The notes beneath the pieces were generated by a model that saw only the letters and a program-made list of their open reading frames with translations, made no database searches and was not told the origin of the DNA. Of a stretch of DNA of 41,517 nucleotides, positions 1,804-41,517 are shown in pieces. A program made the translations under genes and the position numbers. Positions within the stretch are counted from its first letter, which is position 1. Every line of letters begins with the position of its first letter. The stretch comes from Macrostomum lignano (Eukaryota). The stretch spans positions 1 to 41,517 of the forward strand of contig NIVC01003925.1 of the NCBI GenBank assembly GCA_002269645.1. Direction: 5' to 3'.

Positions 1804-2197
1804 AACACAGCCAAGAATAATTTCCTTGTAGGTCTTTCGTGTTTTGGTCATTGCATACAAAACAGTCATGCACAGCTCACCGCAAATATCACTGCTAAGA
1901 CCTTGGAGAATAAAGTCTGAGCGATAAATTTTTTTATTTTTTTCCCTTCATATAATTTCTTAGCTCTTCTGGTACTGCCGTCCCATAGCTATCGAAGTAA
2001 TAACACTTGTGCTTGCGATCGGGATCAATCACCCAGCAAACCCAATGAGATCCTGGCTTATCGGTGGTGTCAAAGTTCATGATGCCGCATTCCTTTCTTA
2101 GAGGAAAATCAGGCAGAGTGTCCCTCATAAATATTCCTCTAAAGTTTGGGATTTCCAGTTCGTTAGCCAAATCTTCAAGAAAGTTATTTGTCGTCAT
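1798..2197 (-). CDS. Adenain-type (adenovirus-like) cysteine protease, 1-nt frameshift in an A-run at ~1930-1940
   Basis: GSHWV (His) and YFDSYG (Asp) lie in the listed ORF. The shifted frame continues IYRSDFILQGLSSDICGELCMTVL...GCVS*, supplying the oxyanion Gln and catalytic Cys. Confidence 0.87.
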
Positions 2198-2288
2198 TTT
2201 TTATGAGGTTTATTAAACTTTCTCTTAAACCTAAACCAATCTCCTAACTCCTAATCTCCAGTGCCGAACCTAACCTCCACCTCCTAAC

Positions 2289-5200: not shown

Positions 5201-6112
5201 CTTCTTTTCGCATTCGATAAGATAGTAGTTGAAATAATTTTGATAATTTGAGGTTCTTTCGGGGTGGTGAGGTACACTAATAAGTGCAGAAAGAACTGCC
5301 CATAGGGCACAGCAATTGTCTTTATTTTTAACATTTATGCAAGCTTTTTTGCCGGCTAGCTTATGCGGGAGCTCTATATAAGAGGAGGCTTTAAGTGGGT
5401 CATATTTCATGACCATGACAGTTGCTCTTTGAATCCCTCCCACGACCCATCCGGAACCTCTGGATGTAAACGCTTCAATTTTCTTAGTGACATCTTGAAG
5501 GAAAGGATCCAGTGTGTCAGTAGGGGTGAATGGTTTTGCCTTTGTTGTCATGTAATACTCGAGATGCTCAGTGGGTTTTGCAGGCATATAAAACGCAATC
5601 TTGAATGATATCTGTAGTTTAAAAGTCTTGCGTGTTTTGAGTGTGTGATCAACAACTGATTGGATGCTGTCTTTATAGTCGTAGATGTTTGCGGTGGTAT
5701 CCTTAATTGGGATTGTGTACTCTATGTAATGTTCTGTAAACTTCCTCTGTGCAAAATTAATCTCTTCAATGGCAAGCTCCGACTCTTTTAAATGGATTAA
5801 TTGCTCTAATTTCTCTTGTTCCTGCTTATTTTGTGGGTACTTTGTTTTTTCACCAGTGAGAGTTTCGTATTTGTTAACTAAGTTGCGACTCCTCTCTTGG
5901 TGTTCCTTTGCAGAATTTTTTATAGGCGCATACTGGTTGGATTCTAATTGATTGATGATTTCCAACTGTTTTTCATAGCTTCCCAGGTGACCAGGGTCGG
6001 TGTTAAACTTTTGTTTACATGCTTCTCTTAGTAAATTACTTTTGTCTTGAAATGAGACGCCTTTTGAAAAATATTTGTTGACTAAATCTTTTGCTGGATT
6101 AGCTTTTGGCAT
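2289..6112 (-). CDS. pPolB: Protein-primed family B DNA polymerase with endonuclease-VII-like Zn insert; one 1-nt frameshift at ~4790
   Basis: ExoI VVYADFE, ExoII HNAKNYDMH, ExoIII LYTDVFLL, PolA YLDANNLYGWAM, PolB KLANNSVYGK, PolC YTDTDS, and CHIC...VRDHCH..G.FRGAAHNTCN. The N-terminal half is ORF 4649-6151; true ATG inferred at 6112 (MPKAN). Confidence 0.96.
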
Positions 6113-6253
6113 TTTTTTCTCTAAAATAAAAAAAATTTTGAGGGTAACCACCCTGATATAAAAGTTGAACTGTTTCTACATACTATAAGTAGCGTTAGGT
6201 TTATGAAGCTGGATAAAGTGGGATTTTAAACCTCATCACTTTCACATTCACAT

Positions 6254-6710
6254 TCACATCCGCATTATTGTAAACCCAGCATTGTGCAGTGTCATGATTG
6301 CTTTGACAATGTCAGACTTGCTTACAGAATTTTCATGCTCACAATCATCACGATCGGGGCAGCCCTCAGGGCAGCCCTCTCCTGCCTTAATTGTTATACC
6401 TTTATCTCTTGCAATCTTTTGCAATTCAAGCTGGTGGGCTCTATCATTACCAGCTTTAACAGCAGTTGCTACACCTCCAGCTACACCACCTGCGGCACTT
6501 ACAGCGCCTGCAATGATCGGAATAAGAGCTGCTAATGGTAGGATTCCTCCTGACTTTTCATCTGTGATGCTGTCTTTGTTCATTACACTGAACTATTTGC
6601 TGCACGGGATCGACTTTTACTTTGGCACCTTTTATTGATATAAGACCTGGTTTCTTTGATTCAATGATTTTATTGAGTTTATTGATGGTTCTGGTTTCAA
6701 TCTTTGTCAT
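6254..6710 (-). CDS. Adenovirus pX/mu-precursor-like virion protein; basic N-terminal segment probably joined by a frameshift near 6590
   Basis: KSGG-ILPLAALIPIIAGAVSAAGGVAGGVATAV closely parallels adenoviral pX (MRGG-ILPLLIPLIAAAIGAVPGIASVA). An upstream Lys-rich frame from ATG 6710 reads MTKIETRTINKLNKIIESKKPGLISIKG... Confidence 0.62.
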
Positions 6711-6727
6711 TTTTTTATTTTAATATT

Positions 6728-7723
6728 TTAATTAATTTCTGTGTCAGCCGGTATCACTAGGAGTTCAGCTCTAGTGAATGACCGTGTGGGGGATTTAGGG
6801 TTAAAGGCCTGAGATAAAAAGTAATAGTCACCAGAGTCGGAGGTAAAATGTCTGTCTATTTTATGTACATCAAGGCTGAAGTATGGATCTGTAGCTCTTC
6901 TTTTAGTGTCTTTCTCTAGCTCTCCAGGTAGATATAAAAAGCGTAGAAACTCAGAGTTTGTCAGTATATATGGTGATTCAACTCCTGGAAGCTTAGGGTA
7001 GTTCGAGGTGTCTGTTCTATGAGATGCCTTAAGTTCGACAGTGTCTTGTTTAATTGCATGGGACGGTTTCAATCCAGTCATACGTGTGACTTCATTGTTC
7101 AGTTGCTCTATAACAGTGGGGAGCCGGTCTGTCCACTTGGTATAGTATTGGCCACTTTTTAGTTTCAGCTCTACAGCTGTCTGCTTAGTGAATAGCCTCT
7201 TGGCTAGAGTTAGATTGAATCTCTCAACGTACGCTTGGTCTCTGTGCAAGTTTGTTCTGCCATAGCGAATCTCTGTATTGTGCTTTTCCATAAGGGATTT
7301 CACTGCACCCATGAATTCTTTGCCAGGATCAGTCATAAAGGTTTCAGGGTAGCTAAGGGGTGAGTTTTTATAAATATCTTGGAGGGCGGCTGCAACTGCT
7401 TCTGACTTCTTAGTCTTAAGCGGTCTCGCTTCCTTATATCTGGAGGCAACATCTGTAATTGTGAGAGCATACTTGTAGCCCGAGTCATTGGGGAGAAACA
7501 GAAGATCTGCTTGGTGCGCCTCATTAGGTTTATAAATACTGAAATGGGGCCTTTCAAATTTTACTGGTGGGAAATAGACTTGGTAGACTGCTTGCTTAGA
7601 GAGCCATTTTTCTACTTTAGCTTTTGGTTCCTTACTTAGTTCTGCGAGTTTGGTGACTGCATTTTTTCCTACAAAGAATCCTTTGTCGCTGTAGTAGAGT
7701 TTTTTAAGTTTCTGATCTGTCAT
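6728..7723 (-). CDS. Retroviral-like (RVE) DDE integrase of Polinton type, intact
   Basis: HQADLLFL (D), MTDPGKEF (D), AYVERFNLTL (E) and the N-terminal L..LYY motif. ATG at 7723 (MTDQK); the ORF track starts upstream at an alternative codon. Confidence 0.93.
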   Translation of the reverse strand: MTDQKLKKLYYSDKGFFVGKNAVTKLAELSKEPKAKVEKWLSKQAVYQVYFPPVKFERPHFSIYKPNEAHQADLLFLPNDSGYKYALTITDVASRYKEARPLKTKKSEAVAAALQDIYKNSPLSYPETFMTDPGKEFMGAVKSLMEKHNTEIRYGRTNLHRDQAYVERFNLTLAKRLFTKQTAVELKLKSGQYYTKWTDRLPTVIEQLNNEVTRMTGLKPSHAIKQDTVELKASHRTDTSNYPKLPGVESPYILTNSEFLRFLYLPGELEKDTKRRATDPYFSLDVHKIDRHFTSDSGDYYFLSQAFNPKSPTRSFTRAELLVIPADTEIN

Positions 7724-7753
7724 TTTTTTAAAAAGAAAATTTAAAATAAAATA

Positions 7754-8242
7754 ATGCAACGCTCTGGTGGTAAAATAGATTCACATGGACTGATAGAAAA
7801 GCTTCCTCATCCAAACAAAGGCTGGACCATTCCCGGGTACAAATATTGCGGGCCTTTGAATCCACTTGAAATACAGTTAGATACAAACGATAATCCAAAT
7901 CCTGGGCATGAGCCTGTGAACGAGCTAGACTCTGTCTGCATGTGGCACGACGTTAAATATAGAGATTTTCCTGAGGAGAAGAATCGCTGGGACAAAGAAA
8001 TGCTTAGGAGACTAGACAATATAGGGGCTTCAAGCGGATTTCGTGAGTCGATCGCTCGGAAGCTAGTTAAAGCTGTTATTTTTAGTAAGACAAAACTGGG
8101 GTTGGGGGTCGACGACGAGGGTGGGTGTTTGGGGAGAGAGGGTGGGTGTGCGGAGTGCTCGGGAGCAGGGTTTATTTTGTGCGCTCCTAACAATGAATTG
8201 GGAAGGCTCTTGAAAGATATGGGGGTAGAGAGAGCAGAATGA
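7754..8242 (+). CDS. Parvovirus VP1u-like phospholipase A2 (Polinton/adintovirus PLA2)
   Basis: Ca-binding loop PGYKYCGPLN, catalytic LD..C..HD..Y, downstream D (RWDKEM) and a K.KLGLG tail. Confidence 0.85.
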   Translation: MQRSGGKIDSHGLIEKLPHPNKGWTIPGYKYCGPLNPLEIQLDTNDNPNPGHEPVNELDSVCMWHDVKYRDFPEEKNRWDKEMLRRLDNIGASSGFRESIARKLVKAVIFSKTKLGLGVDDEGGCLGREGGCAECSGAGFILCAPNNELGRLLKDMGVERAE

Positions 8243-12346: not shown

Positions 12347-15300
12347 ATGGCGTCGCAAGCAGGCAAAATTCGGAGTCAAGAACTCAACCTCAACGATCCC
12401 GAACTCGCTGAGGCATGGATGCAGCAGCTTTCCGCCACGGCCCGCAATAAGAAACTTACGGACACGGACGAAGCGCGGGATAAGACTGACTTGTTCCTGT
12501 CCAAGGCTGGACTACAGGCGATCCGGACGCTGTCTCTGATGGCCGCACCAAAAAAGCTGGAGGCACTCAAATTTAGCAAAATCGAGACACTAGTAACAGC
12601 AACAATCCGGCCTAAGAAAAGGCTGGTCATCGCTGAGCGCACCAGATTTCTAAGCCTCAAACAAGAGCCAGGTGAATCGATCAGCACTTACTACCGTCGG
12701 CTTCGAGCAGCGGCGGCGCTGTGCGAATTCGAGGAGCTTGGGGCCAAGCAGTCCAAAGAAAACGACCTCATCGCAATGAGACTGCTCGACGGCCTTGCCT
12801 CTCCCGAACACAAGAAGAGGATTTTGGAGCGGCTCCAAAAGGCGAAGAAAAACTTCTTGACGATATCCTGCAAAACCTGCAGCAGCTCAAACAAATCCAA
12901 CAGTACAATAAAGGCACGACCAACACCGCTTCATCAGGCGCGCCCGTTCCCCTGGAGATCGCTTTTGCAGGTCAACCAAGAACGGCCGGTGCGGCAGCCA
13001 AGTCCTCAGGAGCGGCCGGTAAAGGCAGGTGCTATTACTGCGGTACAACTCACCCCAAAGGCAGTTGCCCGGCTTTCGGTCAGAGGTGCACCAAGTGTAA
13101 ACGAAAGAATCATTTTGCGGCGGTCTGCAGATCCAGAGAAGTGCACTTGACCCAAGAAGAATCAACAAGCGATCGTGAGAATCAAGACCAAGAGCCAGCC
13201 GACATTTTCGTGGTCGCTCCAGGGCGTAGCAACGGACTCTTTCACGAGGCGAAGATCAATGGTCGGACCCTGCCCATGCAGATTGACACAGGGGCCGAGG
13301 TGAGTCTACTTCCGCAAAATCTGTGGGTCAAGCTCGGCCTCCCTTCTCTCAAAAGGTGCAGGCGAACACTCAGGCAGTACGACGGATCCAGCATTTCCTG
13401 TCTAGGAGAATTCACTGCCTCCCTAGAAACCGACACCAACTTTGTCACACTGGACTTAATCGTCACGGAGGCCAGCAAGCCACATGGACTGCTGGGAATG
13501 GACGTCATCAAGCTGCAAGGGGACGCTATTACAATCAACGCTGTCGGCCAGCTAGGATGTCTCAAAAACTTCAAAGCCAAGATTCGCCTTGTTGACGGAG
13601 TAAAACCGTTTTACTGCGCAGCCAGGCCCGTTCCCATTCACCTGCGAGACCGGGTTAATGAGGAACTCAAGCGAATGGAGGCTGAGCAGATAATTGAACC
13701 TGTTCCAGCCAGAGGGAGTCAGTGGGCCTCACCAATTGTCAGTGTGCTGAAACCTAACGGAAAGGTGCGCGTCTGTGCTGACTTCAAAGCAGGAGTTAAT
13801 CACCAGGTGTGCAATGATACATACCCAATGCCTGAGATGGAGACAATCTTTGCGGAGACCTCTGGAATGTCGCACTTCTCCAAAATCGACCTCTCGGATG
13901 CATATTTGCAGATAGAGCTTGACGAAGACAGCAGAGAAATCACCACAATCGCCACACCTTTGGGCCTCTATCGCTATAAGCGTCTCGTTCCAGGCCTCAA
14001 ATCAGCATCATCTATCTTTCAAAAGGCAATGGAATCAGTCCTTGCCGACATCACCGGCAAGATAGTTTATCAGGACGACATTCTTCTCGGCGGAAAATCT
14101 GACTCAGAGATCGACTCAAAAGTCAAAAACGTCATAGCTACCCTAAAGAAGGCAGGAATGTCAATCAACTTGGAAAAATCAACCCTCAAGGCTAGGGAGG
14201 TCTCATTTCTCGGGTACAGAGTCAGCGAGAGAGGAATTTCTCCTGATCCAAATTTGGTCGATCGGATCCGCGCCGTCAAGACTCCGGAAGACAAGAAGCA
14301 ACTAGAATCTTTTCTTGGTCTTGCCAACTTCTTTGGCAGATTCGTTCGCAACTACTCACAGATCATCGAGCCACTCAACCGGTTACGAACCAAGAACGCA
14401 AGGTTCAGTTGGGGACCCGATCAGACTCAGGCCTTCGAGCGAATCAAAGCCATTCTTAGCAGTGCGCCAGTCCTACAGCCCTACGACAAGACCAAAGAGA
14501 CGACTCTTACCACAGATGCAAGTGAGAGGGCCATCGCCGCTGTGCTCACCCAAAACGGCCACCCGGTTATATACCTTAGCAGACGGTTGAGCAGCAGGGA
14601 GTCGCGCTATTCGAATATCAAAAGAGAGGCCCTCGCCATCGTTTGGGCGATGGAACGCGCCAAGCAATTCCTTCTCGGTGCCCGATTCACTCTACGGACA
14701 GATCATCGGCCTCTAGAGTTTCTCTTCGGAGCGCGGCGGCAACTTCCAAAGGTGGCGAACGCTCGGCTACTTCGCTGGGCGATCAAGCTAATGGCCTTCG
14801 ATTTTGACACGATCTACACAAAAGGTGAGCACATTCCGCACGCTGATGCCCTCTGTCGCCTTGACTGCAACGGTGAACTATCCAAATCAGAACCTGCTGC
14901 CTTGGAAGGTCTGGTTCATTGGGCAGGCGGCCCGGTGATTCCATGGGAGGAGCTGCAAGCGGAGACCCAGCGCGATCGTCTACTCCAAGATATTGCTGAG
15001 CGAGTCGCATCAAGCAGATGGTCAGGATGCTCCCCAGCTGAGAGGCCGTACAAGTCAGTTCGCCATGCCTTAGTGATAGACGACGGCATTCTCTGCTACG
15101 GTGATCGACCAGTGATTCCTGCGGCACTCAGGCAGCGCGTCCTGGATCAGGTACACAATGACTCGCATCAGGGAACCATGGCAACTCTCTCACTCATCCG
15201 CAACTCGGCCTGGTGGCCAGGATATTGCACGGACGTGGAGCGGCACGTACGCAACTGCCCCACCTGCACGCGAATTCGGCCCTCTGGCACACCTACGGTA

Positions 15301-15347
15301 CATCAGTGGCCAAAGGAAGACGAGCCGTGGCATCGCGTGCATATGGA
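12347..15347 (+). CDS. Gypsy gag-pol polyprotein (Gag, 2 Zn knuckles, protease, RT, RNase H, integrase Zn finger); 1-nt frameshift at ~12850, truncated
   Basis: AER.RF..LKQEPGES, CYYCGTTH...C / CTKCKRKNHF..VC, IDTGAEVS, DLSDAYLQ, YQDDIL, TDASERAI, H..SHQG...CPTC. Confidence 0.93.
12348..12363 (+). promoter_or_regulatory. Primer-binding site TGGCGTCGCAAGCAGG, probably for a tRNA-Ser
   Basis: TGG one base after the inferred LTR end; its complement CCTGCTTGCGACGCCA resembles tRNA-Ser 3' ends. tRNA identity is inference. Confidence 0.6.
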
Positions 15348-15998
15348 AGCTGAGATTGCAGAAATCAGCTCGGCCCTTGCCAGCCGGGTAGTGCAGGTAG
15401 CTCGGCTCTGAGCTGTTGAGCCTCCAGCTGTTCCCGAACTCAAACAGCTGCCTCTCGGAGCTGCCAGCTGGCAGGACGCTGCCGTTTCTCAGTTTGAATC
15501 CGCTCGCGTCGCTGTTGCCCAGCAACCCGTCCAGTCCGCTCGGGTATTTTCCTGCCAAGTCCAGTTGAACGCCGACTCTGAGCGAGCTCGTCTCCATGGT
15601 AACGGTGACGCTGACGCCGGTAGACTCGTCGACAATGTCGATGGTGCTGTTGTCGGGGACCTCCAGCCGGTAGCTGTCCAGTCTGGTCGCGTTGCTCAGC
15701 GCCGCCAGCTCGCCCCTGACGCTGCCGATCCGACGTCCGTCGCTGCTGAAGACGTCGAGGTCGTCGAAGCTTTCGTTGCGGATCACCGACACGGCCAGCT
15801 CGTTGAGGCCGGACTTCAGCGCGACGCCGACGAAGGCCGTGGCGGCTCCACCGCTGACTGGCGCGGTGCGCGCTTGCAGCCGCAGCGTCGGTGAGTTCGG
15901 CCACCGCTCGCTGGTGAGCAGGTGGTACTCGCAGTGACCGTTGAATGTGTAGCTGCGGTTCGAGAGCGTGCTCAGGTGGGGGTCGCCTCGGTTGAAGC
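15348..15998 (-). CDS. Exon 8: VWD domain (GDPHLSTLSNRSYTFNGHCEY...GLLGN...FEFGNSW), cut off at the Gypsy junction
   Basis: GDPH...YTFNG.GEY and GLLGN are VWD hallmarks; CTCCAG acceptor at 15999-16000; no donor before the junction. Confidence 0.88.
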
Positions 15999-18900
15999 CT
16001 GGAGATCGGAGGTTGGTTTTTTGGTTTGATGCTTAGTTGCTCAGGTTTTGGTTTGATGCTCAGTTGGTTAGGTTTTGTTTTGATGCTTAGTTGCTCAGGT
16101 TTTGGTTTGATGCTTAGTTGCTCAGGTTTTGGTTTGGTGCTTAGTTGCTCAGGTTTTGGTTTGATGCTTAGTTGCTCAGGTTTTGGTTTGATGCTTAGTT
16201 GCTCAGGTTTTGGTTTGATGCTTAGTTGCTCAGGTTTTGGTTAGATGCTTAGTTGCTCAGGTTTTGGTATGATGCTTAGTTGCTCAGGTTTTGGTATGAT
16301 GCTTAGTTGCTCAGGTTTTGGTATGATGCTTAGTTGCTCAGGTTTTGGTTAGATGCTTAGTTGCTTAGGTTTTGGTTTGATGCTTAGTTGCTCAGGTTTT
16401 GGTGTGATGCTTAGTTGCTCAGGTTTTGGTGTGATGCTTAGTTGCTTAGGTTTTGGTTAGATGCTTAGTTGCTTAGGTTTTGGTTTGATGCTTAGTTGCT
16501 CAGGTTTTGGTTAGATGCTTAGTTGCTTAGGTTTTGGTTTGATGCTTAGTTGCTTAGGTTTTGGTTTGATGCTTAGTTGCTCAGGTTTTGGTTTGATGCT
16601 TAGTTGCTCAGGTTTTGGTTAGATGCTTAGTTGCTTAGGTTTTGGTTTGATGCTTAGTTGCTCAGGTTTTGGTTAGATGCTTAGTTGCTTAGGTTTTGGT
16701 TTGATGCTTAGTTGCTCAGGTTTTGGTTAGATGCTTAGTTGCTTAGGTTTTGGTTTGATGCTTAGTTGCTCAGGTTTTGGTTAGATGCTTAGTTGCTTAG
16801 GTTTTGGTTTGATGCTTAGTTGCTCAGGTTTTGGTATGATGCTTAGTTGCTCAGGTTTTGGTTAGATGCTTAGTTGCTTAGGTTTTGGTTTGATGCTTAG
16901 TTGCTCAGGTTTTGGTTAGATGCTTAGTTGCTTAGGTTTTGGTTTGATGCTTAGTTGCTCAGGTTTTGGTTAGATGCTTAGTTGCTTAGGTTTTGGTTTG
17001 ATGCTTAGTTGCTCAGGTTTTGGTATGATGCTTAGTTGCTTAGGTTTTGGTTAGATGCTTAGTTGCTTAGGTTTTGGTTAGATGCTTAGTTGCTTAGGTT
17101 TTGGTTTGATGCTTAGTTGCTCAGGTTTTGGTTAGATGCTTAGTTGCTTAGGTTTTGGTTTGATGCTTAGTTGCTTAGGTTTTGGTTTGATGCTTAGTTG
17201 CTCAGGTTTTGGTTAGATGCTTAGTTGCTTAGGTTTTGGTTTGATGCTTAGTTGCTCAGGTTTTGGTTAGATGCTTAGTTGCTTAGGTTTTGGTTTGATG
17301 CTTAGTTGCTCAGGTTTTGGTATGATGCTTAGTTGCTTAGGTTTTGGTTTGATGCTTAGTTGCTCAGGTTTTGGTTAGATGCTTAGTTGCTTAGGTTTTG
17401 GTTAGATGCTTAGTTGCTTAGGTTTTGGTTTGATGCTTAGTTGCTTAGGTTTTGGTTTGATGCTTAGTTGCTTAGGTTTTGGTTTGATGCTTAGTTGCTC
17501 AGGTTTTGGTTTGATGCTTAGTTGCTCAGGTTTTGGTTTGATGCTTAGTTGCTCAGGTTTTGGTTTGATGCTTAAAAATGTCCTAAAGCAGTTGAGCCGC
17601 AATACGCTGGAGCTGCCAAAAGTGAATAAATAAATGAAATTACTCAATATATGTGTACCCAGATCTAAAGTTAAAGCAAAGCAGTTACCTCCAGCTGGTG
17701 GTTGGTAGTGCTGGCTGGTGCACACGGGTCTTACGGCAGAATAAGCGGACATCATTCCGGCAGCTGAGCAGATTTTTTGGCCATATAATTCATCCTGACG
17801 AAACCAGAAGCCATATCGAATTTTATCACTTGTGCTGTTCCGAAAGAAGTACATTGCGTGTCCGGCACCGTCTGAGCTGCTGCTGATGAGGTGGCCAGCT
17901 GCAAATGATGCTGTTTTATTAATTCTGTTGTGTGCGCACTTTGCAGTACGGAGTGCACTCTGTCCTCCAGACTGTATGAGTCACCCATGCGTCCCCTTTT
18001 TCGTGGTTTACGCGAGTCACCCCTCCCCTGCTTGAGTTGCCCTCCCCTTGGCGGGGTGTTTGGCTGGATCGGTGGTTGGGTGGTAGGTGGGCTTGTGGTC
18101 TTCCCCCTCCGCAGGCAATGGCTATTTTGCGGCTCCCGCCGGGTTTTTAGGCGGTGCTTTTCTTTCTGCGTCTCCTCTCTGCGTTTTGGTGAAGTTTACT
18201 ACACCTTTTCATTTTCAGTTTGAACTACCGGTGTTAGAGTTTAGGATCTCCGCGTTTTAGGGTCTCCGGCCCGGAGATCACAAACTGAAAATTGTGTCAT
18301 TTTAAGATCGCCAACACGGAGATCGGAAACCGGAGATCCTAAACCAGGACTTTGTTTTTGCGGCCCTGACGGAGAGCTGAAACTGGTTTAGAGTCTCCTG
18401 GGGGGAGATCAGAAACTGGTTTAAGATCTCCGGGTGCGGAGACCTAAAAATGCCCCGGAGACCCTTAAACGGTTTCAGATCTCCTACCCCGGAGACCCAT
18501 AACCGTTAGAAGTCTCCAGGGCCCATAACCAATAACCAATAACCCAAAACCAATTTTAATTTTCTCGCATCCGATTCCGACGGTTTTTGGTTGGGACAGT
18601 TTCGTCGAAATTCGACAATAGGCATAAATTTTCAACAAACAATCGATCAGTTCCAACAACTGCCAACCAATTCCGTCAAGTGGGGTAGTAAGAGCTTGGT
18701 ATATCGTTTTCCGGTTGAAAATTGCATTCTGCAAATTCAATCCCGACACTATTTAATCCGACACTACTTGTTTGTGAGTCTTGCGTACTCTACTAACCCC
18801 CCCCCCTATTGTCCTTTTCTTTCTCCGTCGCCCATTATATTTCTGTCCCACCCCTCTGGCGCTTGCGTAAGCCTCCCGGTGCCTGATTGGCGGAGGCTCA

Positions 18901-33510: not shown

Positions 33511-34761
33511 CACGGCTTTGTTGTTAAACGGGGGTGGGAAGCTTTGCTACCGCGGATCAGCCCTGGGAGGGGCTCTGCCGCAGAGGGCACTGCCAAGGGC
33601 ACAGATAAGACTGTGTACCCGAGATACCCGAAACACCAATTTAGTTGGGCCCCAGCTTAAAGCTAGGGAAAGGGCGAGGGACTTCAAGCCTATGGTACAA
33701 GACACCGCCAAACCAACAGTGGAATCAGGGACGGTGCTAGGACCGAATCCACCCAGACCATCCCCCAGCCAGCAAGTCTTTTGGGTGTGCGCAGAGAAAT
33801 TTGAAAACGAAAAGTTTGGGATACTACTGAAAGCGGTCCAAGTGAGGAACTACTCCTAAACCTTGGAAATGGCTTAAACTATTGGAGCGAGTCTGGGCAG
33901 CTAATTTACCAAGAGCGATCCTATACAGCACCCGTCAACTGTAGGTCTCGAGCCTCAAGGCTTTTCACTACCCAGCTCTATTTTGGAGTGAGTCTGGAAG
34001 GCTTGTATCCGAGGGGGAGACTCCAGGCGGGAAGACCGTTCACCTCTATTGCTGCCAACCCAAGGGCATCGCCTATCCAGCTCATTATTGGGGGCCAGGC
34101 CAAGGGGTCGGGAGAAGAGGCACCCAGGGCAAGAGGACTCCGGACTCAGCCGGTTGTCCCCGGTACGGGACGAACATCCTTCCCAGGACACCAATCCACT
34201 GTCAGGATGAGAGCCAGAGACACGCAAGCAGGGACCTTACAGCAGGAGCCAGGAGATGGACCCGAGGACAGGGCAAGATGGACCGGGCGAGGGCAGAGCT
34301 CATAACTCCAGAGAAATTGGATTTGGCTCAAGGCCTAATTAAGCTAAAACTAGATAAAAGCAGGGGATAAAACCGCGCTGGGATGCCAGCCCAGAAAAAA
34401 AGAATGGCAGTGGGGAGGAGCACCATAGCCCTAAAGCAGGCAGCTTGCCGGCCTGCAGCCCGGGTGCTCAGCCTCAGGGCTGGCATGCTACTGGGTCTAC
34501 CGTACACCTTTGTGAATAGGTCTTTCTTTCCTGCAGGGCGGGTTCGTCCTAGCCACACTGCAGTCCAGAGAACCTACTCACTCCGGGCACCCCCCCCCCT
34601 AAACCAAGGCCGAGGGCCAAAAAAATGGTTAGAAATAAGAATAGGGTTTAGTATTTGTAATGGGCACAGCCCCTCCGGGGCGGACCCTTAAGAATTGGCT
34701 AGGCCAATCGGATTGCGCACAACCCTTAGACAAGCTGCCAGAGAGACAGCCAGGGTAAAAA

Positions 34762-37174
34762 CAGTCAGAGGCTTCGCTCAGCGGCTTCCTCATCGGCCGG
34801 CCGGTCTCGCGCGAATCTGCTCCTAAAGCGACAGGCCAGGATAGCTTAAGGACTTATCTTGTATTTAGTCTACTTTGACCTACTATCAGTAGTATTTTTT
34901 AAGTTTTATAAGTTTTATTATTAATAGTTTTATATTCTAAGGATTTTTTCTTGTAAAATAGGCCACTGTTTTATTAAGGTCAATGAACGTTGAGTGTAAC
35001 AGCAAACGCAGTGCCCGCGACACGGACTCACCTCCGATTGCGAACTCAAAAAAAGCCAATCACCGAGACTCAGCTGGTCCAAGCCGAAGATCCGAACCTA
35101 AGACCATGCTGTCTCCATCAAACGCGCCGCTGCCCGAGACGCCTCCGCAAACCGGCACGTCCAAAGGTGAGCGGGCTGAGCCTTTGCCTCCCCCTAAAAG
35201 GGACAGTTTAGAGGTTAGAAAAGAACATGGTAAAACAACTATAATACGAATTCCAATAGCTGACAAGACTGATGAGAAAACTGTCACATTGCCAAACAAC
35301 AGCAACATCTGCTACTACCCGGTTGCTCTTAAGAGCTCGGAAAATCAAATACTCAAAATACTAACCGACGAAATCCAGGCCAAAAGCCTTTCACCATCTC
35401 ACAAAAGGCCGTCCTGAAGCCCGCAAAATTGTATGGTTCAGGCCAGAATATAGCTACGGGGGAACTAAGATTCCGGCCAATGACGACTGGCACCCGTTGG
35501 TTACTAGTCTTGCTACTTGGCTGAGCGCTGAGTTTGGTCTACCCGTCTTCAACTCATGCCTCGTAAATTATTACAAAGATGGGTCCGTGCACATTCCTTG
35601 GCACTCAGACGATGAAGACGAACTAGGGGCTAATCCGACCATAGCCTCTATCTCTATTGGTGCCGCACGTGACTTCCACTTACGAACCAAAGGCTCCACC
35701 AACATCGCTTGGTCCCAAAAACTCGCCAGTGGTTCTCTGCTGGTAATGGGGGGTGCGACACAGGCACACTTCCAGCACGCCGTCCTTAAGGACCTAAAAG
35801 TCAAAGAGGCAAGAGTAAATCTAACATTCAGGCTAACGTATGATAGCAGAATCCCACCTGATCCTGCTCCTGCTTCTGCTCTTGCAAACCCTTGCGTGCA
35901 GCCTCTTGACAACGATATCACCTGCGATCTGGACGACGAAAATTCGGTTCGTCGCAGAGCAGAGCAAGAAGCCGAAAATCTGAAAAAGATCAGATCACGT
36001 TCGAACAGCTGCACTTCGGGGCACAAATCAAGCACTCAGCAATCTCAAACAGCTAACCAGCTCACTGGCTCTCAGCAGTCAGCCACTCAGTCTAGCACCA
36101 AACAACACACTCAATCAGGCACTCAGCAACATTCAACAAACACTCAGCAGGCACACTCTGTCAAATCAGCCATCAGGTACACTACAGTCAGCCACTCAGT
36201 CTAGCACTCTGCCGAAGCACTCAGCAACTCTGCAACCACATGCAAACAATCAGCAGACACTTTCAGACACTCAGCAATCAGGCGACCAAACTCAACCACC
36301 TAACAACTACAAGCTGCCAGCTACTCAGCAACCTAACATTCACCAATCTAACCAATCTAGCCAACTAAACTCTACAACTCTAAACTACCATCCTAAAACT
36401 AATAATACTCAAAAATCTACTAACTCAGCACCTGTCATCTTTGAAATCGACCAAGAAGGCAAAGATCCCATCAAATTCGAATGGTTTCTGAAAACAAATT
36501 TCCCAGACGTTCGCATCAGGTCGGTTAAGGACCTATACCATAGCTCCGGCTACATCGTGATTCCAGATCACCCTAAGGACTTCAACACACTATTAACAGC
36601 TATTCTCAAAATAAATAAAATTAATAACCACGAAGTCACGCGACGCACAGCAGCCAAAAGGCCAATAAGACAAGGAGATGATCAGGCGCGTGCTCCACTA
36701 AAATCACCAACAACGTACTCGTTTATCGTAAAACATGTGCCAATCACCGTAGACGCACACATGCTAGCCAAACACTTGGCAGACTCAGAGCAGCAACTAC
36801 CAATTGACGGCGCTGTGCGCATTGTCTCTAGGGCAACTGGTGCACCTACTCCGCACATCCGCCTCTTCACTAAGAGCAAGGGCACGATGGAAAGATGCAT
36901 CCAGCATGGAGTCTACCTTGGTTACAGCAAATTTAAATGCGAAGAGTCTATTAATTTAGCTCCGGTAAAAGCAATCCAATGTAAAAAATGTCAGAGATTA
37001 GGGCATCATGAAAACAGATGCACAGCAACCTACAGGTGTAACAAATGTACGGGAGATCACTATTCTGCAGACTGCCCGAAAGAAAGCAAATTTAAATGCG
37101 CAAACTGCGGCGAAGAACACCCAGCTTACTCATATAGATGTAGTAAAGTAAAAGAAGCGAACGAAATTGCCATT
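34762..37174 (+). mobile_element. 5' part of a non-LTR retrotransposon (Jockey/I-like ORF1 with AlkB domain); ORF2 absent, interrupted by a CACTA end
   Basis: Inr-like CAGTC at 34762, AT-rich leader, ATG 34983, and an RRM-like region plus three CCHC knuckles typical of LINE ORF1p. Confidence 0.75.
34983..37174 (+). CDS. AlkB-ORF1p fusion (~730 aa) with two 1-nt frameshifts (~35385 and between ~36100 and 36182)
   Basis: AlkB: RKIVWF..YSYGG, NSCLVNYY.DG..HIPWHSDDE, FQHAV, RVNLTFR. Then a Q/S/T linker, an RRM-like block and CKKCQRLGHHENRC / CNKCTGDHYSADC / CANCGEEHPAYSYRC. The frames were checked open over 35365-36204 and 35984-37303. Confidence 0.85.
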
Positions 37175-37535
37175 ACCCGCCTGGATAGCCGATCCGGTTG
37201 TCGTCCGGCCGTCGTCCGCATTGGTCCGCGTTTGGTGGTCGATTCCGGACAAATGCAGCTTTTCGTCCGGTATTCATCCGGTTTAAGCTGCCGGACAAAG
37301 TAGCGGGCCAGTTTCCGGATCAGAGCCGGACAAAGTGGTGATTTTTTTACTTAATTGGTCCATTTTAGTCCGGAATTATATCCGCTTGTTTACCCGCAAA
37401 AACCGGATGAAGCGTCGGATGACTTTACGGATGACTAGCCGGATGAATTGTCACTGTCGTCCGAAAAGTCATCCGCATTTTAATCCGGGCTGTCGCCCGC
37501 CTAACAACCGGACGAAGAGCGGATATGTTTCCGGG
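37175..37535. repeat. CACTA/EnSpm-type terminal region: CCC...GGG ends and many CCGGA subterminal motifs in both orientations
   Basis: Begins CCCGCCTGG at 37175 and ends ...TTTCCGGG at ~37535; more than 12 TCCGG/CCGGA motifs. Confidence 0.6.
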
Positions 37536-38005
37536 TGATAGTGGAGCACGTGGAATTGAATAGTGGAAAATGGCACCTTTCTCCTACTTGTATGCCCACA
37601 GTTTGTAACACATGTTCCAGAAACAGCAGCACAACGTGTTCTATTTCTTATGCTCCAAGTTCTACAGAAAAATATACTTCTCCGTATGACATTTCCCACG
37701 TTCTGATTTTGATGGGAGACTTCGATGTTGTTCGATGCCTTCGCATCTTTTGCATGTGTGCAACACATTAGATAGTACACTATGTTAGATAGGGATCATA
37801 GAGGTCTTGGAAACAGCGGGTATTGTTGGACAAAATTGGTCTCGTCCGAGTTGTTACTGAAATGCAGAAATTCAGAAACATGTCGTCCATTCTATACGTG
37901 GATAGATGAATAGGTCACACAGCAGATAGTGCTACAGTGAATATGCGCATCTAGACATCATAAACCAACCCAATCTCTTTCAGTACTGCACGACTCGCAA
38001 ACTGC

Positions 38006-39760
38006 ATGGACAATTCAGATTTACCGCCGCGGTTACAGCGGAGGCAGTACATGCGAGAGTACATGCGGCAGCGTGCGTTGGCCAATTCAAATAGTCGACA
38101 AGAAGGTTCGCGATCACCTCTGCGTCCAACCGCAGGAACTTCTGCAGATGTCGACTCCGGCGAAGTCCAGTCCGGCGGCGCAGGCACCAGTGGGACTGCT
38201 GCAGTCGTCGCAGCTGCAAGCGGATCCGCCTCTACATCTACAGTATCTCGATCTCGAGATGAGCAGTCTGTATACCTGCCTATAGACAATCCAGAGTCCG
38301 ACGACGGTGGCGCACAGGCCGATGGCCGCAATGGGGACCCGGTGTCGAGCTCTGACAGCACTTCGGACGGGGATTCTTCCTCTAGTGGTGAGTCCCAGTC
38401 AGAGAGTTGGCTTATCGTGGATTGTGGATCCATCCCAATGGCTCATGTTTGATACTTTTGTGTTACCTGCACGTTGCACTCACACTGTCCACCGAACACA
38501 TGCGCACTACGCTCACCACACACAATATATTCCTCCCAGGTTCGCAGTCTGTTGACGGCCAGAGCACAGACTCCGACAACGACGAGGACGTCCCGGGGTT
38601 TCCAGGAGTCAATTGGCACGACGCTCTGCCCGTTTCGCTCGGAGAGGCGATTTGGGAGGTCAGCTCCTGCGCGAGGGAACTGAACCTGACAGTTAGCGGG
38701 ACGACAAGGCTGCTTTCACTACTGCACAGGCTAGTACCCGACAACCGCCTTCCTCAGCACGGACGAACATTGCGTGAAACTTTGAAGAAGAGGGGAACAA
38801 TCTCGGGGTCGTCAACATGTTACACTGTCTGCAACGACTGTTATCTACATTCCGAGCAGCGCTGCGATCCAGGAAATCTAATTGTGCGCACTGTACGTCG
38901 GAAAATGTGGCCAACTTCTGGTTATTCGACATACCTGCGCAGATCCGAACATTCGTTGAATCTCGCGGTCTTCTACAGAGCGTAACATTTCCGATTGAAC
39001 GGCTTGCACTGGACGAAGAGAAGCTGCACTTTGCCAACAGCGAACTGTACAAGTCGTTTCTCGAGAACATCGAACCCGAGACTCGGAGCGACCTTACATA
39101 CACCATCTGTGCAGACGGATTTCCTCTTTTCTGCACTAGCAATGTCGAGGTGTGCCCCGTCTATCTGAGTATTAACGAAGTGCACGAGCGGCTGAAGCTC
39201 CGATTCGTGATGAAGTGTGGCGTGTGGGCCGGCAAGAAAAAGGTCCATGCCGCCGCCTTTCTGCCAATCGTCGTAAATGCACTGAATACTCTGCGCTTCG
39301 ATGGTGTACAGTATATCGACAGCCTCGGGGTTCAGCGTCGATTGCATCTGCATCCGCTAATGGCGCTGTTCGACGCTCCAGCGAGAGCGGACGCTCTGTG
39401 CATGAAGCGTTTCTCGGCTATCTACGGATGCGAGAAGTGCTACATCCGGACATCATTGCATCCATCAGGCCATGGACGAGTCTACGGCGTCGGGGTTACT
39501 GACGCGATGCTTAATCAGGCCAGACGTCTAGGATGCGTTCAGACTGTAGTGCGGTCGACCAGCGACACTCACACTCTCGCTGAGCAGCACGCACAGCAGG
39601 GTGGCGACATTCGGACTGACGTCCTCGGTGTCCGTGGCCTGTCACCGCTGTCTCGACTGCACGGGTTTGACTTTGTCCGCGGCTGTCCACCGTGTTTCCT
39701 GCACCAGTTGTGCTCCGGCCTGGTACGCAATATTTTGTACCAGCTGTTCCTCTGGTACGG
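38006..39760 (+). pseudogene. CACTA/EnSpm transposase with one intron (38388-38539) and one frameshift (~38865), 3'-truncated
   Basis: LP...RTL, CNDC/CAHC, ICADGFPLF (D1), CGVW.GKKK, LFDAPARA (D2), YGCEKC, GVRGLSPL..L.GFD. A GTGAGT...CTCCCAG intron joins the two N-terminal frames in phase 1. Confidence 0.88.
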
Positions 39761-39764
39761 CCCT

Positions 39765-41517
39765 AGCGCTTGTGGGGACCAACGCCTGTTGATTCCAGGT
39801 CGTGCCGTCGCTCAGCCGGTACGCGGCGCCGGCCTTGGTCATGATCTGTAGCGGGCCGGACAGTCTCGTGGCCAGCTTGCCCTTCTTGATGGGCCGCCGC
39901 ACTCGGACCCAATCGCCTGGTCGGAGGTCGCTGACTCGCGCCCGGCGGCGTAGGTCCGTGTAGCGCTTGGTCCGCTGTTGCCGGTCGTAGATGGTCTCGC
40001 GCAGTCGCCATCCTTCGTCCGTCTCATTGATGTCTTTGGGCGCGCCAGGGCAGTCAGCATCGTCCGCATCGATCGCCCTAGCATGAGCTCGGCGGGGCTC
40101 CTGCCGTCAGGCTGTGCGGCGTGCTCCGGTAGACCTCCAGGAACTGGGTGATGGCGTCGGACAGCGGCGTGCAGTCCTCCTTGGCCGCTCGAATGCTGCC
40201 AGCCACTTCCAGTTTGTCGAGCTCGGCCTCCACCAGCTGCTGCTCGATGACGGGCTTGTGCACGGCTCCGCTGCAGCAGCCGATCTGCTCGCTAAGGGCC
40301 GCTGGAAACTGCCTCTCCAGCTGCTCCACGACGCTGTTCACCTCGCTGACGTCCTCGAGAGGCTCACATGGAAACCGAGCTTATCCATGAGGTCTCGGCC
40401 TGCGATGTTGTCGCCGTGCTTCGCGATGTAGAATAGGTGTTGCAGCGACCGGTTGTTGTGCTTAACGGGACCACCGCTTGGCCCACGAGATCGATCAGCT
40501 TGCCGCCGTATGCGCGCAGCTTCATCGTTGTCGGCTGAGGTAGCACCTCGGTCAGGAGCGCGGCCGGTCGGCGTTCAACAGTGACACCTTGGCGCCGCAG
40601 TCGATCAGAGTATTGACCGGCACCTCTGCTTGTCCGAACCGCAGCTGCGCACGGATCTCACCGTCTCCCTGCACGGCGTATATAGTGACCGCCTCGTCCG
40701 GGCCGTCCTGAGCCTGGCCGGTCACTTGGAGCGCCTTGCTCCGGCAGCAACGGCTGAAATGGTTCATTTTGCCGCAGCTGTTGCAGGACTGCCCCTTCGC
40801 TGGGCAGTTGCCGTCGCCGTGACTGCGTCCGCAGCGAGAGCAGGCCTTGGCGGCGGGTCGACTTTGCTGGCCTTTCTTAGCTGGCTCCGCCGCGCCGCTC
40901 CACTTCGCCTTTGGCTTCTGCGCCTGCCGGACCGCGTGCACGGGCTCCGTCTCCATCAGAGCCTGACAGCCCTTTGACGCCTTCTCGATGGTGACGGCGA
41001 TGGCGAGGGCCCTCTCCAGCGTGAGAGTAGCCGCGTCTTCCGTCAGCAGTCGCTCTCGGATGCGAGCGCTGCCAGTCTTCTCTGCCAGTTGGTCTCTGAT
41101 GAGCTGGTCTCGGAGATTTCCGTACTCGCAGGGCTCGGCCAGCTCCCTGAGCGCGGCCACGAAGGACTCTGCGTCTTCGCCGGCAGCTGGTGTCGTTGGC
41201 GGAATCGGAAGCGAGCCACCATCACGTTGGGCTTCTCTCCGAAGATCCCGCCCGTCCAGCTTTGCCTTCGCCTCCTTGAAGGAATCTCCCTCCGTGAGTG
41301 CTTTTCTCGCCTTGCAATGCGCTGGCCTTCGAATCGAGCAGGTGGAGCAGCAGATTCCTCTTTGTGGGTTCCGCTCGGATTGCCCCTCCGGCTCCCGAAA
41401 CTGGGATGCCGTGTAGAAGAATTCGAACGCGTCCAGCCATCTTGGCCACGGGACTGCCGGTTGGCCGCTCACGGAAGAAAAGGCGCTGGTGCTGGAAGGC
41501 TGGGTCCGCTCATCCTC
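39765..41517 (-). mobile_element. Ty3/Gypsy element, internally deleted (Gag-protease, start of RT, then integrase C-terminus); 5' end outside window, no 3' LTR seen
   Basis: W.RWL..FE, FVAALRELAE.CEYG, IRDQL, CSRCGRSH..C / CNSCGKMNHF..CC, LIDCGAKVS, then ELDKLEVAG directly joined to FLEVYRSTPH...ELMLGR.MRT...GP. Confidence 0.88.

What the first reader, a model, noticed from the sequence alone, without database searches (positions are those of the whole stretch)
34983..37174. LINE ORF1 protein carrying an AlkB demethylase with all catalytic residues
Seen: an ALKBH2/3-type domain with HxD (35602-35610), distal His and RxNLTFR, upstream of an RRM-like region and three CCHC knuckles. Fusion is supported by both frames being open across 35984-36201 and by the repeat peptide QSATQSS being encoded once in each frame, which places one indel between them. 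Established: AlkB reverses m1A and m3C, these lesions block reverse transcription, plant RNA viruses carry AlkB, and ORF1p coats its own RNA in cis. Inference: this retrotransposon packages its own RNA-repair or demethylase activity to protect the template or erase host marks. AlkB-bearing retroelements may have been noted before; I could not check this family.
Basis: partly seen in the sequence, partly recalled or inferred. Interest (0 to 1): 0.85.

Follow-up and report, generated by a model that had tools for sequence, protein, structure and literature searches.

The report
LINE retrotransposon ORF1 carrying AlkB demethylase
This stretch is a broken copy of a flatworm jumping gene (a LINE) whose RNA-coating protein has a built-in ALKBH3-like demethylase, a combination I found in no paper and which selection has clearly kept in intact relatives.

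Summary
Window 35277-35859 encodes an AlkB dioxygenase domain (Pfam PF13532, E 2e-30). It keeps HxD, the distal His, RxNLTFR and the N/Y 2-oxoglutarate contacts. By sequence and predicted fold it is closest to human ALKBH3, then ALKBH2. Downstream lie a Q/S/T-rich linker, two tandem RRMs and three CCHC knuckles, which is a Type I LINE ORF1. The fusion is real: four intact proteins from independent assemblies and Macrostomum lignano gene models carry AlkB and RRM-CCHC in a single ORF. In three of those lineages an apurinic-endonuclease ORF2 follows directly, and in one it is a complete endonuclease plus reverse transcriptase. AlkB is conserved as strongly as the RNA-binding core (pN 0.21-0.24 against saturated pS 0.70-0.81). 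The LINE AlkBs form one clade (bootstrap 0.90), which fits a single old capture. The window copy itself is dead. Function is inferred, not shown: in-cis removal of m1A/m3C-type methyl groups from the element's single-stranded RNA or cDNA. The only earlier transposon-borne AlkB found in the literature is an ALKBH5-like ORF in orchid Gypsy elements. I rate this a new variant of a known kind.

The parts
34983..35384 (+). ORF1 start (ATG at 34983) and N-terminal segment, read in frame 0. From about 35277 it encodes the first strands and helix of the AlkB fold (KTVTLPNNSNICYYPVALK...DEIQAK).
   Evidence: ORF list and three-frame translation. tblastn of M. lignano P0271 residues 1-26 maps to 35313-35390 in this frame.
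35382..35385 (+). Frameshift 1. A run of four A where relatives read GCC AAA GCC (..AKAFHH..). One extra A moves the reading from frame 0 to frame 1.
   Evidence: DNA sequence. P0001 and P0271 read DEIQAKAFHH continuously. The P0271 tblastn pieces overlap here.
35277..35859 (+). AlkB (2OG/Fe(II) dioxygenase) domain of ALKBH2/3 type, closest to ALKBH3. It spans frameshift 1.
   Evidence: Pfam PF13532, E 2e-30. PDB phmmer: ALKBH3 E 1.9e-25, ALKBH2 5e-19. AF2 pLDDT 92.9, pTM 0.89. Foldseek: ALKBH3 TM 0.84-0.87, E. coli AlkB 0.66, ALKBH5 0.63.
35566..35574 (+). N-Y-Y. The Asn and the second Tyr correspond to the 2-oxoglutarate-stabilising N and Y of AlkB enzymes.
   Evidence: Columns N195 and Y197 are invariant in alignment A1. 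Coordinates. The role of these residues is taken from PMC9289625 (ALKBH5 Asn-193, Tyr-195).
35602..35610 (+). H-S-D, the first two iron ligands (HxD).
   Evidence: Aligned to WHSDDE of human ALKBH3. H207 and D209 are invariant. Coordinates.
35776..35778 (+). Distal His, the third iron ligand.
   Evidence: Aligned to the QH of ALKBH3. H265 is invariant. Coordinates.
35812..35832 (+). RVNLTFR, the two 2-oxoglutarate-binding arginines (RxxxxxR).
   Evidence: R277, N279, L280, T281, F282 and R283 are invariant in A1 and A3. Coordinates.
35860..36430 (+). Low-complexity Q/S/T-rich linker built of degenerate CACTCAGCAA-like repeats. It contains frameshift 2 (frame 1 to frame 2), somewhere between 35984 and 36201, probably near 36160.
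   Evidence: Both frames are open over 35984-36201. Repeat families D1-D5. Relatives have a linker of similar length and composition in one frame.
36055..36207 (+). Pair of 44-nt direct repeats (36055-36098 and 36164-36207, 77% identical, last 23 nt exact), spaced 109 nt apart, so the QSATQSS peptide is encoded once in each frame.
36431..36652 (+). RRM1 (beta-alpha-beta-beta-alpha-beta).
   Evidence: AF2 secondary structure, residues 3-76 of the model, block pLDDT 93-98. Foldseek tandem-RRM hits.
36713..36949 (+). RRM2.
   Evidence: AF2 residues 97-175. Foldseek hits to HuR, HuD, Pub1, Sxl and hnRNP A1 RRM1-2 at probability 1.0.
36980..37141 (+). Three CCHC zinc knuckles (CX2CX4HX4C, CX2CX3HX4C, CX2CX3HX6C).
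   Evidence: Sequence. All twelve Cys/His positions are invariant in 19 ORF1 relatives.
37142..37192 (+). Last residues homologous to family ORF1s (KVKEANEIA...). The breakpoint lies between about 37172 and 37192.
   Evidence: tblastn alignments end at 37141-37192. Relatives continue for about 200 more residues. No tail or ORF2 match downstream.
37193..37303 (+). Read-through into unrelated CCGGA-rich DNA up to the stop codon. This is not part of the element's protein.
   Evidence: Sequence. No homology to any family member.

Best explanation
Window 34983-37192 is a decayed, ORF1-only fragment of a non-LTR (LINE) retrotransposon family found in Macrostomum flatworms and in at least one further, unidentified set of sequenced samples.

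The family's ORF1 protein has this order of parts: a short N-terminal region, an ALKBH3-like AlkB dioxygenase, a disordered Q/S/T-rich linker, two RRMs, three CCHC knuckles, and a helical C-terminal tail. The endonuclease / reverse-transcriptase ORF2 follows.

Shown here:
- the domain identities;
- the fusion in one ORF;
- the LINE context;
- a single origin of the domain;
- purifying selection on it.

Inferred:
- ORF1p coats its own transcript in cis, so the tethered Fe(II)/2-oxoglutarate dioxygenase most likely removes N1-methyladenine / N3-methylcytosine-type methyl groups from the single-stranded LINE RNA, and possibly from the nascent cDNA.
- These lesions block reverse transcription, so their removal would keep the template readable during target-primed reverse transcription.
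For: Domain identity:
- Pfam AlkB hit, E 2e-30.
- Closest solved relatives by sequence are ALKBH3, then ALKBH2, and by predicted fold TM is 0.84-0.87.
- The iron triad, both arginines and N/Y are invariant.

ORF1 type:
- Two RRMs and three knuckles.
- This matches the Type I ORF1 as defined in PMC4120745.

Fusion:
- P0122-P0126 and P0271 carry AlkB and RRM-CCHC in one ORF.
- These come from independent sources: the UniProt M. lignano proteome and Logan assemblies of several runs.

LINE context:
- L001 has ORF1 followed by a 948-aa ORF2 with Exo_endo_phos_2 and RVT_1, collinear with human L1 ORF2p residues 5-776.
- In L003 and L004 an endonuclease ORF starts 0-1 nt after the ORF1 stop.

Selection:
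- AlkB pN is 0.21-0.24 against pS 0.70-0.81.
- That equals the RRM-CCHC core (0.23-0.26) and is well below the linker and tails (0.35-0.47).

Single capture:
- The LINE AlkBs form one clade, bootstrap 0.90.

Mechanistic background from the literature:
- ALKBH3 and EcAlkB demethylate RNA (PMC2790896).
- Viral AlkBs repair RNA and prefer it over DNA (PMC2553587).
- tRNA structure and modifications interfere with cDNA synthesis by reverse transcriptases (abstract of PMC12140624, seen in the listing).
Against: - No enzymatic or retrotransposition data exist, so substrate (RNA or ssDNA; m1A/m3C or another mark) and benefit are untested.
- The copy in the window cannot make the protein: it has two frameshifts, a truncated tail and no ORF2.
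- The LINE clade is unassigned. ORF2's best database relatives are only 28-35% identical and unnamed.
- The host of the Logan samples is unknown.
- dS is saturated, so dN/dS values are only upper-bound estimates.
Confidence: 0.65

Rival explanations
1. Same element, different purpose. The AlkB domain erases regulatory marks written by the host (m6A or enzymatic m1A/m3C) on the LINE transcript. That would be epitranscriptomic counter-defence rather than repair of chemical damage.
For: An orchid Gypsy-encoded AlkB is an active m6A demethylase in vitro (PMC9289625). m6A writers and erasers modulate human L1 (PMC7873242, abstract). Strong selection on the domain fits any beneficial activity.
Against: The domain is ALKBH3/2-like, not ALKBH5/FTO-like. 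Fold TM is 0.63 to ALKBH5 against 0.84-0.87 to ALKBH3, and ALKBH5 is not hit by sequence. The m6A erasers cited in the literature read here are FTO, ALKBH5 and its plant orthologues ALKBH9B/10B (PMC9289625).
Confidence: 0.18
2. Same element, DNA substrate. The domain repairs 3mC/1mA on single-stranded DNA at the integration intermediate (nascent cDNA or displaced target strand). One possible source is 3mC made as a DNMT by-product in a host that keeps DNMT1/3.
For: The solved ALKBH3 structures matched here are ssDNA complexes. The second-best structural match is the DNA-repair enzyme ALKBH2. M. lignano keeps DNMT1/3, and DNMTs introduce 3mC off-target (PMC9246332).
Against: ORF1p is an RNA-binding chaperone with two RRMs and knuckles, which places the enzyme on RNA for most of the cycle. 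Nothing in the sequence decides between RNA and ssDNA.
Confidence: 0.12
3. The AlkB domain is an inert passenger, or the locus is a host ALKBH-RRM gene (or an assembly chimera) rather than a transposon protein.
For: The window copy has no ORF2 and is a single copy within the window. The M. lignano models are annotated only as 'Fe2OG dioxygenase domain-containing protein'.
Against: The fusion recurs in at least four divergent intact lineages with ORF2 directly downstream. It is seen in independent assemblies and several runs. The catalytic residues are invariant and pN is as low as in the RNA-binding core. The window copy carries frameshifts, as dead transposon copies do.
Confidence: 0.04

Closest known systems
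Type I LINE ORF1 proteins (RRM(s) directly upstream of CCHC knuckles; I, Jockey, R1, Tad1, plant L1 and some L2/CR1 elements), as defined by Khazina & Weichenrieder and surveyed in PMC4120745
   Same: Two RRMs followed by three knuckles with spacings CX2CX4HX4C / CX2CX3HX4C / CX2CX3HX6C, located upstream of an endonuclease / reverse-transcriptase ORF2. The exhaustive search gives 5726 ORF1 relatives at E<=1e-3.
   Different: An about 190-residue AlkB dioxygenase and a long disordered linker are added N-terminally. None of the ORF1 types catalogued in PMC4120745 has a dioxygenase (0 occurrences of the word). Of the 150 best relatives, only the five closest cluster representatives carry AlkB.
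Esterase-type (Type IV) ORF1 of CR1/L2 elements (PMC3905857, PMC4120745)
   Same: It is a precedent for a LINE ORF1 protein that carries an enzyme fold in addition to, or instead of, nucleic-acid-binding modules.
   Different: The enzyme is different (SGNH esterase, proposed to be linked to lipids), and it has no RRM-CCHC core.
ALKBH5-like ORF of Phalaenopsis orchid Ty3/Gypsy LTR retrotransposons (PMC9289625)
   Same: A retrotransposon-encoded AlkB-family dioxygenase with the full iron and 2OG ligand set. It is proposed to act on the element's own RNA, and demethylase activity was shown in vitro.
   Different: Plant rather than animal. LTR element rather than LINE. A separate ORF rather than a gag/ORF1 fusion. 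ALKBH5/9B/10B subfamily (m6A erasers) rather than ALKBH3/2. A recent acquisition in one genus.
AlkB domains of plant RNA viruses (Flexiviridae and others; PMC2553587)
   Same: An AlkB domain embedded in the polyprotein of an RNA-based replicator. The viral AlkBs were shown to remove methyl damage and to prefer RNA over DNA. A single capture was followed by spread.
   Different: Viral replicase context rather than a nucleic-acid chaperone. No reverse transcription step. Plant hosts.
Human ALKBH3 / ALKBH2 and bacterial group 1B AlkB (PMC2790896)
   Same: Same subfamily by sequence (42% identity to ALKBH3, 47-48% to bacterial P0002/P0006 over 140 core columns) and by fold. All catalytic residues are shared.
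   Different: Those are free-standing cellular repair enzymes of about 200-290 residues. Here the domain is fused to RRM-CCHC modules and inherited as part of a mobile element.

Membership tests
AlkB family, ALKBH2/3 subgroup | Double-stranded beta-helix dioxygenase fold matching AlkB enzymes | tested here: met
   Pfam PF13532, E 2e-30. AF2 pLDDT 92.9. Foldseek TM 0.84-0.87 to ALKBH3 and 0.82-0.86 to ALKBH2.
AlkB family, ALKBH2/3 subgroup | HxD...H iron-binding triad | tested here: met
   H-S-D at 35602-35610 and His at 35776-35778. These positions are invariant in A1 and A3.
AlkB family, ALKBH2/3 subgroup | 2-oxoglutarate ligands RxxxxxR plus the N and Y contacts | tested here: met
   RVNLTFR at 35812-35832 and N-Y-Y at 35566-35574, both invariant.
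AlkB family, ALKBH2/3 subgroup | Closer to ALKBH2/3 than to EcAlkB, ALKBH5, ALKBH6 or FTO | tested here: met
   phmmer: ALKBH3 92.8 bits, ALKBH2 72 bits, no other AlkB type at E<=0.01. Foldseek ranks ALKBH6, EcAlkB and ALKBH5 far lower.
AlkB family, ALKBH2/3 subgroup | Fe(II)/2OG-dependent demethylation of m1A/m3C | not testable with these tools
   Needs a biochemical assay.
AlkB family, ALKBH2/3 subgroup | Single-strand preference (ALKBH3-like) versus duplex preference (ALKBH2-like, aromatic finger equivalent to Phe102) | tested here: inconclusive
   Sequence and fold slightly favour ALKBH3. The lid region differs in length, and I could not place the finger residue with confidence.
Non-LTR (LINE) retrotransposon | ORF2 with apurinic-type endonuclease and reverse transcriptase downstream of ORF1 | tested here: met
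   Met in relatives: L001 ORF2 has Exo_endo_phos_2 and RVT_1 and is collinear with L1 ORF2p, and L003 and L004 have the endonuclease. Not met in the window copy, which has no ORF2 remnant.
Non-LTR (LINE) retrotransposon | 3' poly(A) or simple-repeat tail and target-site duplications | not tested
   The window copy lacks its 3' end. The Logan contigs have no clear element ends.
Non-LTR (LINE) retrotransposon | Multiple dispersed, partly degenerate copies | tested here: inconclusive
   There are several M. lignano gene models (P0001, P0121, P0122, P0271) and four Logan lineages. No genome-wide count was possible.
Type I ORF1p (Khazina & Weichenrieder; PMC4120745) | At least one RRM immediately upstream of CCHC zinc knuckle(s) | tested here: met
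   Two RRMs at 36431-36949 are followed by three knuckles at 36980-37141.
Jockey clade (or any named LINE clade) | Placement of the reverse transcriptase in a reference RT phylogeny (RTclass1-type) | not tested
   No reference set was on hand. The ORF2 homologue search returned unnamed proteins at no more than 35% identity. The two-RRM, three-knuckle ORF1 and an ORF2 in which Pfam found no RNase H domain are compatible with the Jockey superfamily only.
Orchid Gypsy ALKBH5-like / plant viral AlkB | ALKBH5-type domain in an LTR element, or AlkB within a viral replicase | tested here: not met
   The domain is ALKBH3/2-type and the host element is a LINE.

The most novel reading that the evidence does not exclude
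A lineage of animal LINEs has permanently built an active ALKBH3-type nucleic-acid demethylase into its RNA-coating protein. If so, base methylation (m1A/m3C or similar) of retrotransposon RNA or cDNA is a real barrier to target-primed reverse transcription, whether it arises as damage or is imposed by the host, and the element pays to carry its own eraser. That would be the first demethylase reported in a non-LTR retrotransposon and the first ALKBH3-type enzyme in any retroelement.
Probability: 0.5. Interest if true: 0.85.

Novelty: new variant of a known kind. Interest (0 to 1): 0.72.

Why it matters
- LINE ORF1 proteins are regarded as RNA chaperones, with very few enzymatic additions; the esterase is the known one. 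A conserved AlkB fusion adds a new enzymatic activity to the LINE toolkit.
- It is a natural experiment on whether RNA or ssDNA base methylation limits reverse transcription in vivo. That question is currently approached only indirectly, through host m6A writers and erasers acting on human L1.
- The system is tractable. M. lignano has established transgenesis (PMC5730564), intact elements exist (L001), and the assays used for the viral AlkBs apply directly.
- There is a practical consequence. Transposon-borne ALKBH2/3-like ORFs are annotated in the M. lignano proteome simply as Fe2OG dioxygenases. They could be mistaken for host ALKBH2 in presence/absence surveys, such as those linking ALKB2 to DNMTs (PMC9246332).

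Tried and rejected
- Word-indexed homologue search with the RRM-CCHC part found nothing. The exhaustive HMMER search was needed.
- Pfam finds no family in the window's RRM-CCHC part at E<=0.1. The RRMs were recognised only by fold.
- Exact-sequence look-ups of P0001 and of the window's 144-aa ORF found no contigs, so no Macrostomum DNA could be fetched. Copy number, element ends and the source species of the window stay undetermined.
- The search for an ORF2 or ORF1-tail remnant in the window, down to E=10, gave only noise.
- The ORF2 homologue search gave no informative names, and names of other ORF1 relatives were uninformative. No clade could be assigned.
- The small ORF between ORF1 and ORF2 in L001 is not conserved in the sister lineage, so I rejected it as a gene.
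- AlkB donor: human ALKBH3 and group-1B-like bacterial AlkBs are about equally distant (42% against 47-48% identity). The tree does not place either next to the LINE clade (LINE+ALKBH3 bootstrap 0.12), so the donor is unresolved.
- Looking for the M. lignano spliced leader, to test whether the Logan samples are Macrostomum, found nothing usable.
- Literature searches for AlkB in LINEs or in Macrostomum found no prior report. One query was rejected for syntax. Repbase could not be searched.
Full report
**1. What is in the window**

The window is eukaryotic and full of transposon remains. It holds a polB plus integrase Maverick/Polinton-like piece, a Gypsy pol, an LTR-element gag, and a 27-bp minisatellite.

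A three-frame translation of 34700-37700 shows three consecutive open segments on the + strand:
- frame 0, from the ATG at 34983 to the stop at 35415-35417;
- frame 1, from about 35368 to the stop at 36202-36204;
- frame 2, from 35984 to the stop at 37301-37303.

Pfam places a 2OG-FeII_Oxy_2 (AlkB) domain in frame 1. The match has E 2e-30 and covers profile positions 51-194 of 194. The missing first quarter of the profile corresponds to the end of the frame-0 segment (..VTLPNNSNICYYPVALKSSENQILKILTDEIQAK).

- H-S-D at 35602-35610;
- distal His at 35776-35778;
- RVNLTFR at 35812-35832;
- knuckles at 36980-37021, 37037-37075 and 37097-37141.

**2. The copy has two frameshifts, not one**

M. lignano proteins P0001 and P0271 read DEIQAKAFHH without interruption. 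In the window this is GCC AAA A GCC TTT, with one extra A in the run 35382-35385. The tblastn pieces of P0271 switch frame exactly there.

The second shift lies in the Q/S/T-rich linker, somewhere in the interval 35984-36201 where frames 1 and 2 are both open. It is a 44-nt direct repeat whose copies start 109 nt apart, which is 1 mod 3.

Homology to family members ends between 37172 and 37192. What follows is CCGGA-rich unrelated DNA. No ORF1 tail or ORF2 remnant is found elsewhere in the window, even at E=10. The window therefore holds a dead, ORF1-only fragment.

**3. The AlkB domain**

- By sequence, the closest solved structures are human ALKBH3 (E 1.9e-25, 92.8 bits) and ALKBH2 (72 bits). 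E. coli AlkB, ALKBH5 and FTO are not hit at E<=0.01.
- An AlphaFold2 model of the domain, joined across frameshift 1 and built with 31 aligned sequences, has pLDDT 92.9 and pTM 0.89.
- The model superposes on ALKBH3 with TM 0.84-0.87 and rmsd 2.2-2.5 A. The values for other enzymes are ALKBH2 0.82-0.86, E. coli AlkB 0.66 and ALKBH5 0.63.
- The iron triad, both arginines, the N/Y pair and about 20 further positions are invariant. The alignment includes the window, M. lignano, four further LINE lineages, bacterial AlkBs and ALKBH3.
- The label 'ALKBH2/3-type with all catalytic residues' is correct.

**4. The downstream region**

Pfam sees nothing there. An AlphaFold2 model of 36425-37192 has pLDDT 89.8 and shows two beta-alpha-beta-beta-alpha-beta modules followed by the knuckles. 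All top Foldseek PDB hits are tandem-RRM proteins (HuR, HuD, Pub1, Sxl, hnRNP A1) at probability 1.0. All twelve Cys/His knuckle positions are invariant in 19 relatives. RRM(s) directly upstream of CCHC knuckles is the definition of a Type I LINE ORF1, and two RRMs plus three knuckles is the Jockey-lineage pattern (PMC4120745).

**5. The fusion is real and the element is a LINE**

An exhaustive HMMER search with the RRM-CCHC part found 5726 relatives at E<=1e-3. The six best behave as follows.
- P0122, P0123, P0124, P0125 and P0126 each carry a Pfam AlkB domain N-terminal to the RRM-CCHC region in the same protein.
- P0121 starts with the last AlkB strand (MRINLTFR..).
- Below them, none of the remaining 144 listed relatives has AlkB.

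P0122 and P0271 are M. lignano UniProt entries. P0123-P0126 are complete Met-to-stop ORFs of 757-962 residues from Logan assemblies of runs SRR31628392-437.

Their contigs show the element structure:
- L001 (9.1 kb) has ORF1 at 1752-4283. A 948-aa ORF2 at 4710-7556 carries Exo_endo_phos_2 and RVT_1 and is collinear with human L1 ORF2p residues 5-776.
- In L003 and in L004-L007 an endonuclease ORF begins 0-1 nt after the ORF1 stop.

The AlkB-bearing ORF1 is therefore the first gene of a non-LTR retrotransposon. Several divergent lineages coexist in the same samples.

**6. Constraint and history**

| Pair | Region | pN | pS |
|---|---|---|---|
| P0123 / P0124 | AlkB | 0.24 | 0.81 |
| P0125 / P0126 | AlkB | 0.21 | 0.70 |
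| both pairs | RRM-CCHC core | 0.23-0.26 | — |
| both pairs | linker, N-terminus, C-tail | 0.35-0.47 | — |

Synonymous sites are saturated, so ratios of about 0.12-0.16 are rough upper bounds. The domain is plainly as constrained as the RNA-binding core.

In a neighbour-joining tree on 140 core columns, the six LINE AlkBs form one clade with bootstrap 0.90. The comparison set was 30 bacterial or metagenomic AlkBs and human ALKBH3. This fits a single capture followed by diversification down to 42-53% identity.

The donor is unresolved. The domain is 42% identical to human ALKBH3 and 47-48% identical to gammaproteobacterial AlkBs. Those bacterial proteins appear to belong to the ALKBH2/3-like 'group 1B' of PMC2790896, and they are themselves 47-49% identical to ALKBH3.

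**7. Mechanism (inferred)**

These points rest on established knowledge or on papers read here:
- ORF1 proteins bind their own transcript (PMC4120745).
- ALKBH3 and EcAlkB remove methyl lesions from RNA substrates (PMC2790896).
- AlkB domains of plant RNA viruses are active and prefer RNA (PMC2553587).
- AlkB treatment is routinely used to let reverse transcriptases read through m1A/m3C (my own knowledge of AlkB-assisted tRNA sequencing methods).

The most economical reading is that ORF1p delivers a demethylase to the single-stranded template, and perhaps to the nascent cDNA, so that target-primed reverse transcription is not blocked.

There are two rivals:
- Erasure of host-written regulatory marks such as m6A. 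The orchid Gypsy ALKBH5-like protein does this in vitro (PMC9289625). Here it is disfavoured because the domain is not ALKBH5/FTO-like.
- Repair of ssDNA at the integration intermediate.

None of these can be separated by sequence alone.

**8. Comparison and novelty**

Seven full-text searches found AlkB in one transposon family only. That is the orchid Ty3/Gypsy family, which is a plant LTR element with the domain in a separate ORF, of the ALKBH5 subfamily. No LINE with AlkB was found. The survey of Jockey-superfamily ORF1 architectures lists RRM, CCHC, PHD, esterase and coiled-coil/CTD modules, but no dioxygenase. Repbase could not be consulted.

I file the finding as a new variant of a known kind: a Type I LINE ORF1 with an added ALKBH3-type enzyme. 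The LINE clade was not assigned.

**9. Limits**

- The source species of the window is inferred only from 79-80% identity to M. lignano proteins.
- The host of the Logan samples is unknown.
- It is unknown whether those runs are RNA or DNA.
- Element ends, copy numbers and activity were not determined.

Noticed in passing
window 2289-7759 (-): Three long ORFs. One has an organellar/viral type-B DNA polymerase (PF03175, E 1e-16) with a weak endonuclease VII match, and one has an rve integrase core. This looks like a Maverick/Polinton-type element fragment.
   Followed up: partly
window 12347-15411 (+): Gypsy-type LTR retrotransposon gag-pol: protease, RVT_1, RNase H and integrase zinc domain in an 896-aa ORF. 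The integrase core appears to be cut off.
   Followed up: partly
window 16019-17574: A 27-bp minisatellite (TTTTGGTTTGATGCTTAGTTGCTCAGG), 57.6 copies at 94% match. It explains the extreme GC and AT skew seen in the composition profile.
   Followed up: yes
window 37180-37530: CCGGA/TCCGG-rich sequence with a 33-nt inverted repeat (37403-37435 / 37456-37488). It starts exactly where the LINE ORF1 homology breaks off. It may be an inserted small element or the other side of a deletion junction.
   Followed up: partly
window 38407-39851 (+) and 40552-41472 (-): Two overlapping long ORFs (192 and 344 aa) have no Pfam family and are Cys-rich, so they may be transposase-like. On the opposite strand there is a gag-like ORF with two CCHC knuckles running into an aspartic-protease-like motif (an LTR element).
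   Followed up: no
L001 1-30 and L003 16-44: Two different AlkB-LINE lineages (P0123 and P0126) share a 30-nt string (AAAACACCTTTTTTTGCAATTTTGACTC..) at the far upstream end of their contigs and diverge right after it. It could be a shared target site, a common 5' end, or a graph branch point of the assembler.
   Followed up: partly
P0001, P0122, P0271 (M. lignano UniProt entries): These 'Fe2OG dioxygenase domain-containing protein' gene models are fragments of the LINE ORF1. P0122 and P0271 skip the second half of RRM2 and the first knuckle, and P0001 changes frame relative to the window. Such entries could be taken for host ALKBH2/3 in gene presence/absence surveys (compare PMC9246332).
   Followed up: partly
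L001 4346-4717; L009 3269-3643: A 123-124-aa ORF lies between ORF1 and ORF2 in the P0123 and P0124 lineages. The two share no detectable similarity, and the ORF is absent in the P0125/P0126 lineage, so it is probably non-coding spacer.
   Followed up: yes
L002 3' end: This Logan contig ends in an Illumina adapter (AGATCGGAAGAGCGTCGTGTAGGG), so contig ends in these assemblies are not all biological.
   Followed up: no
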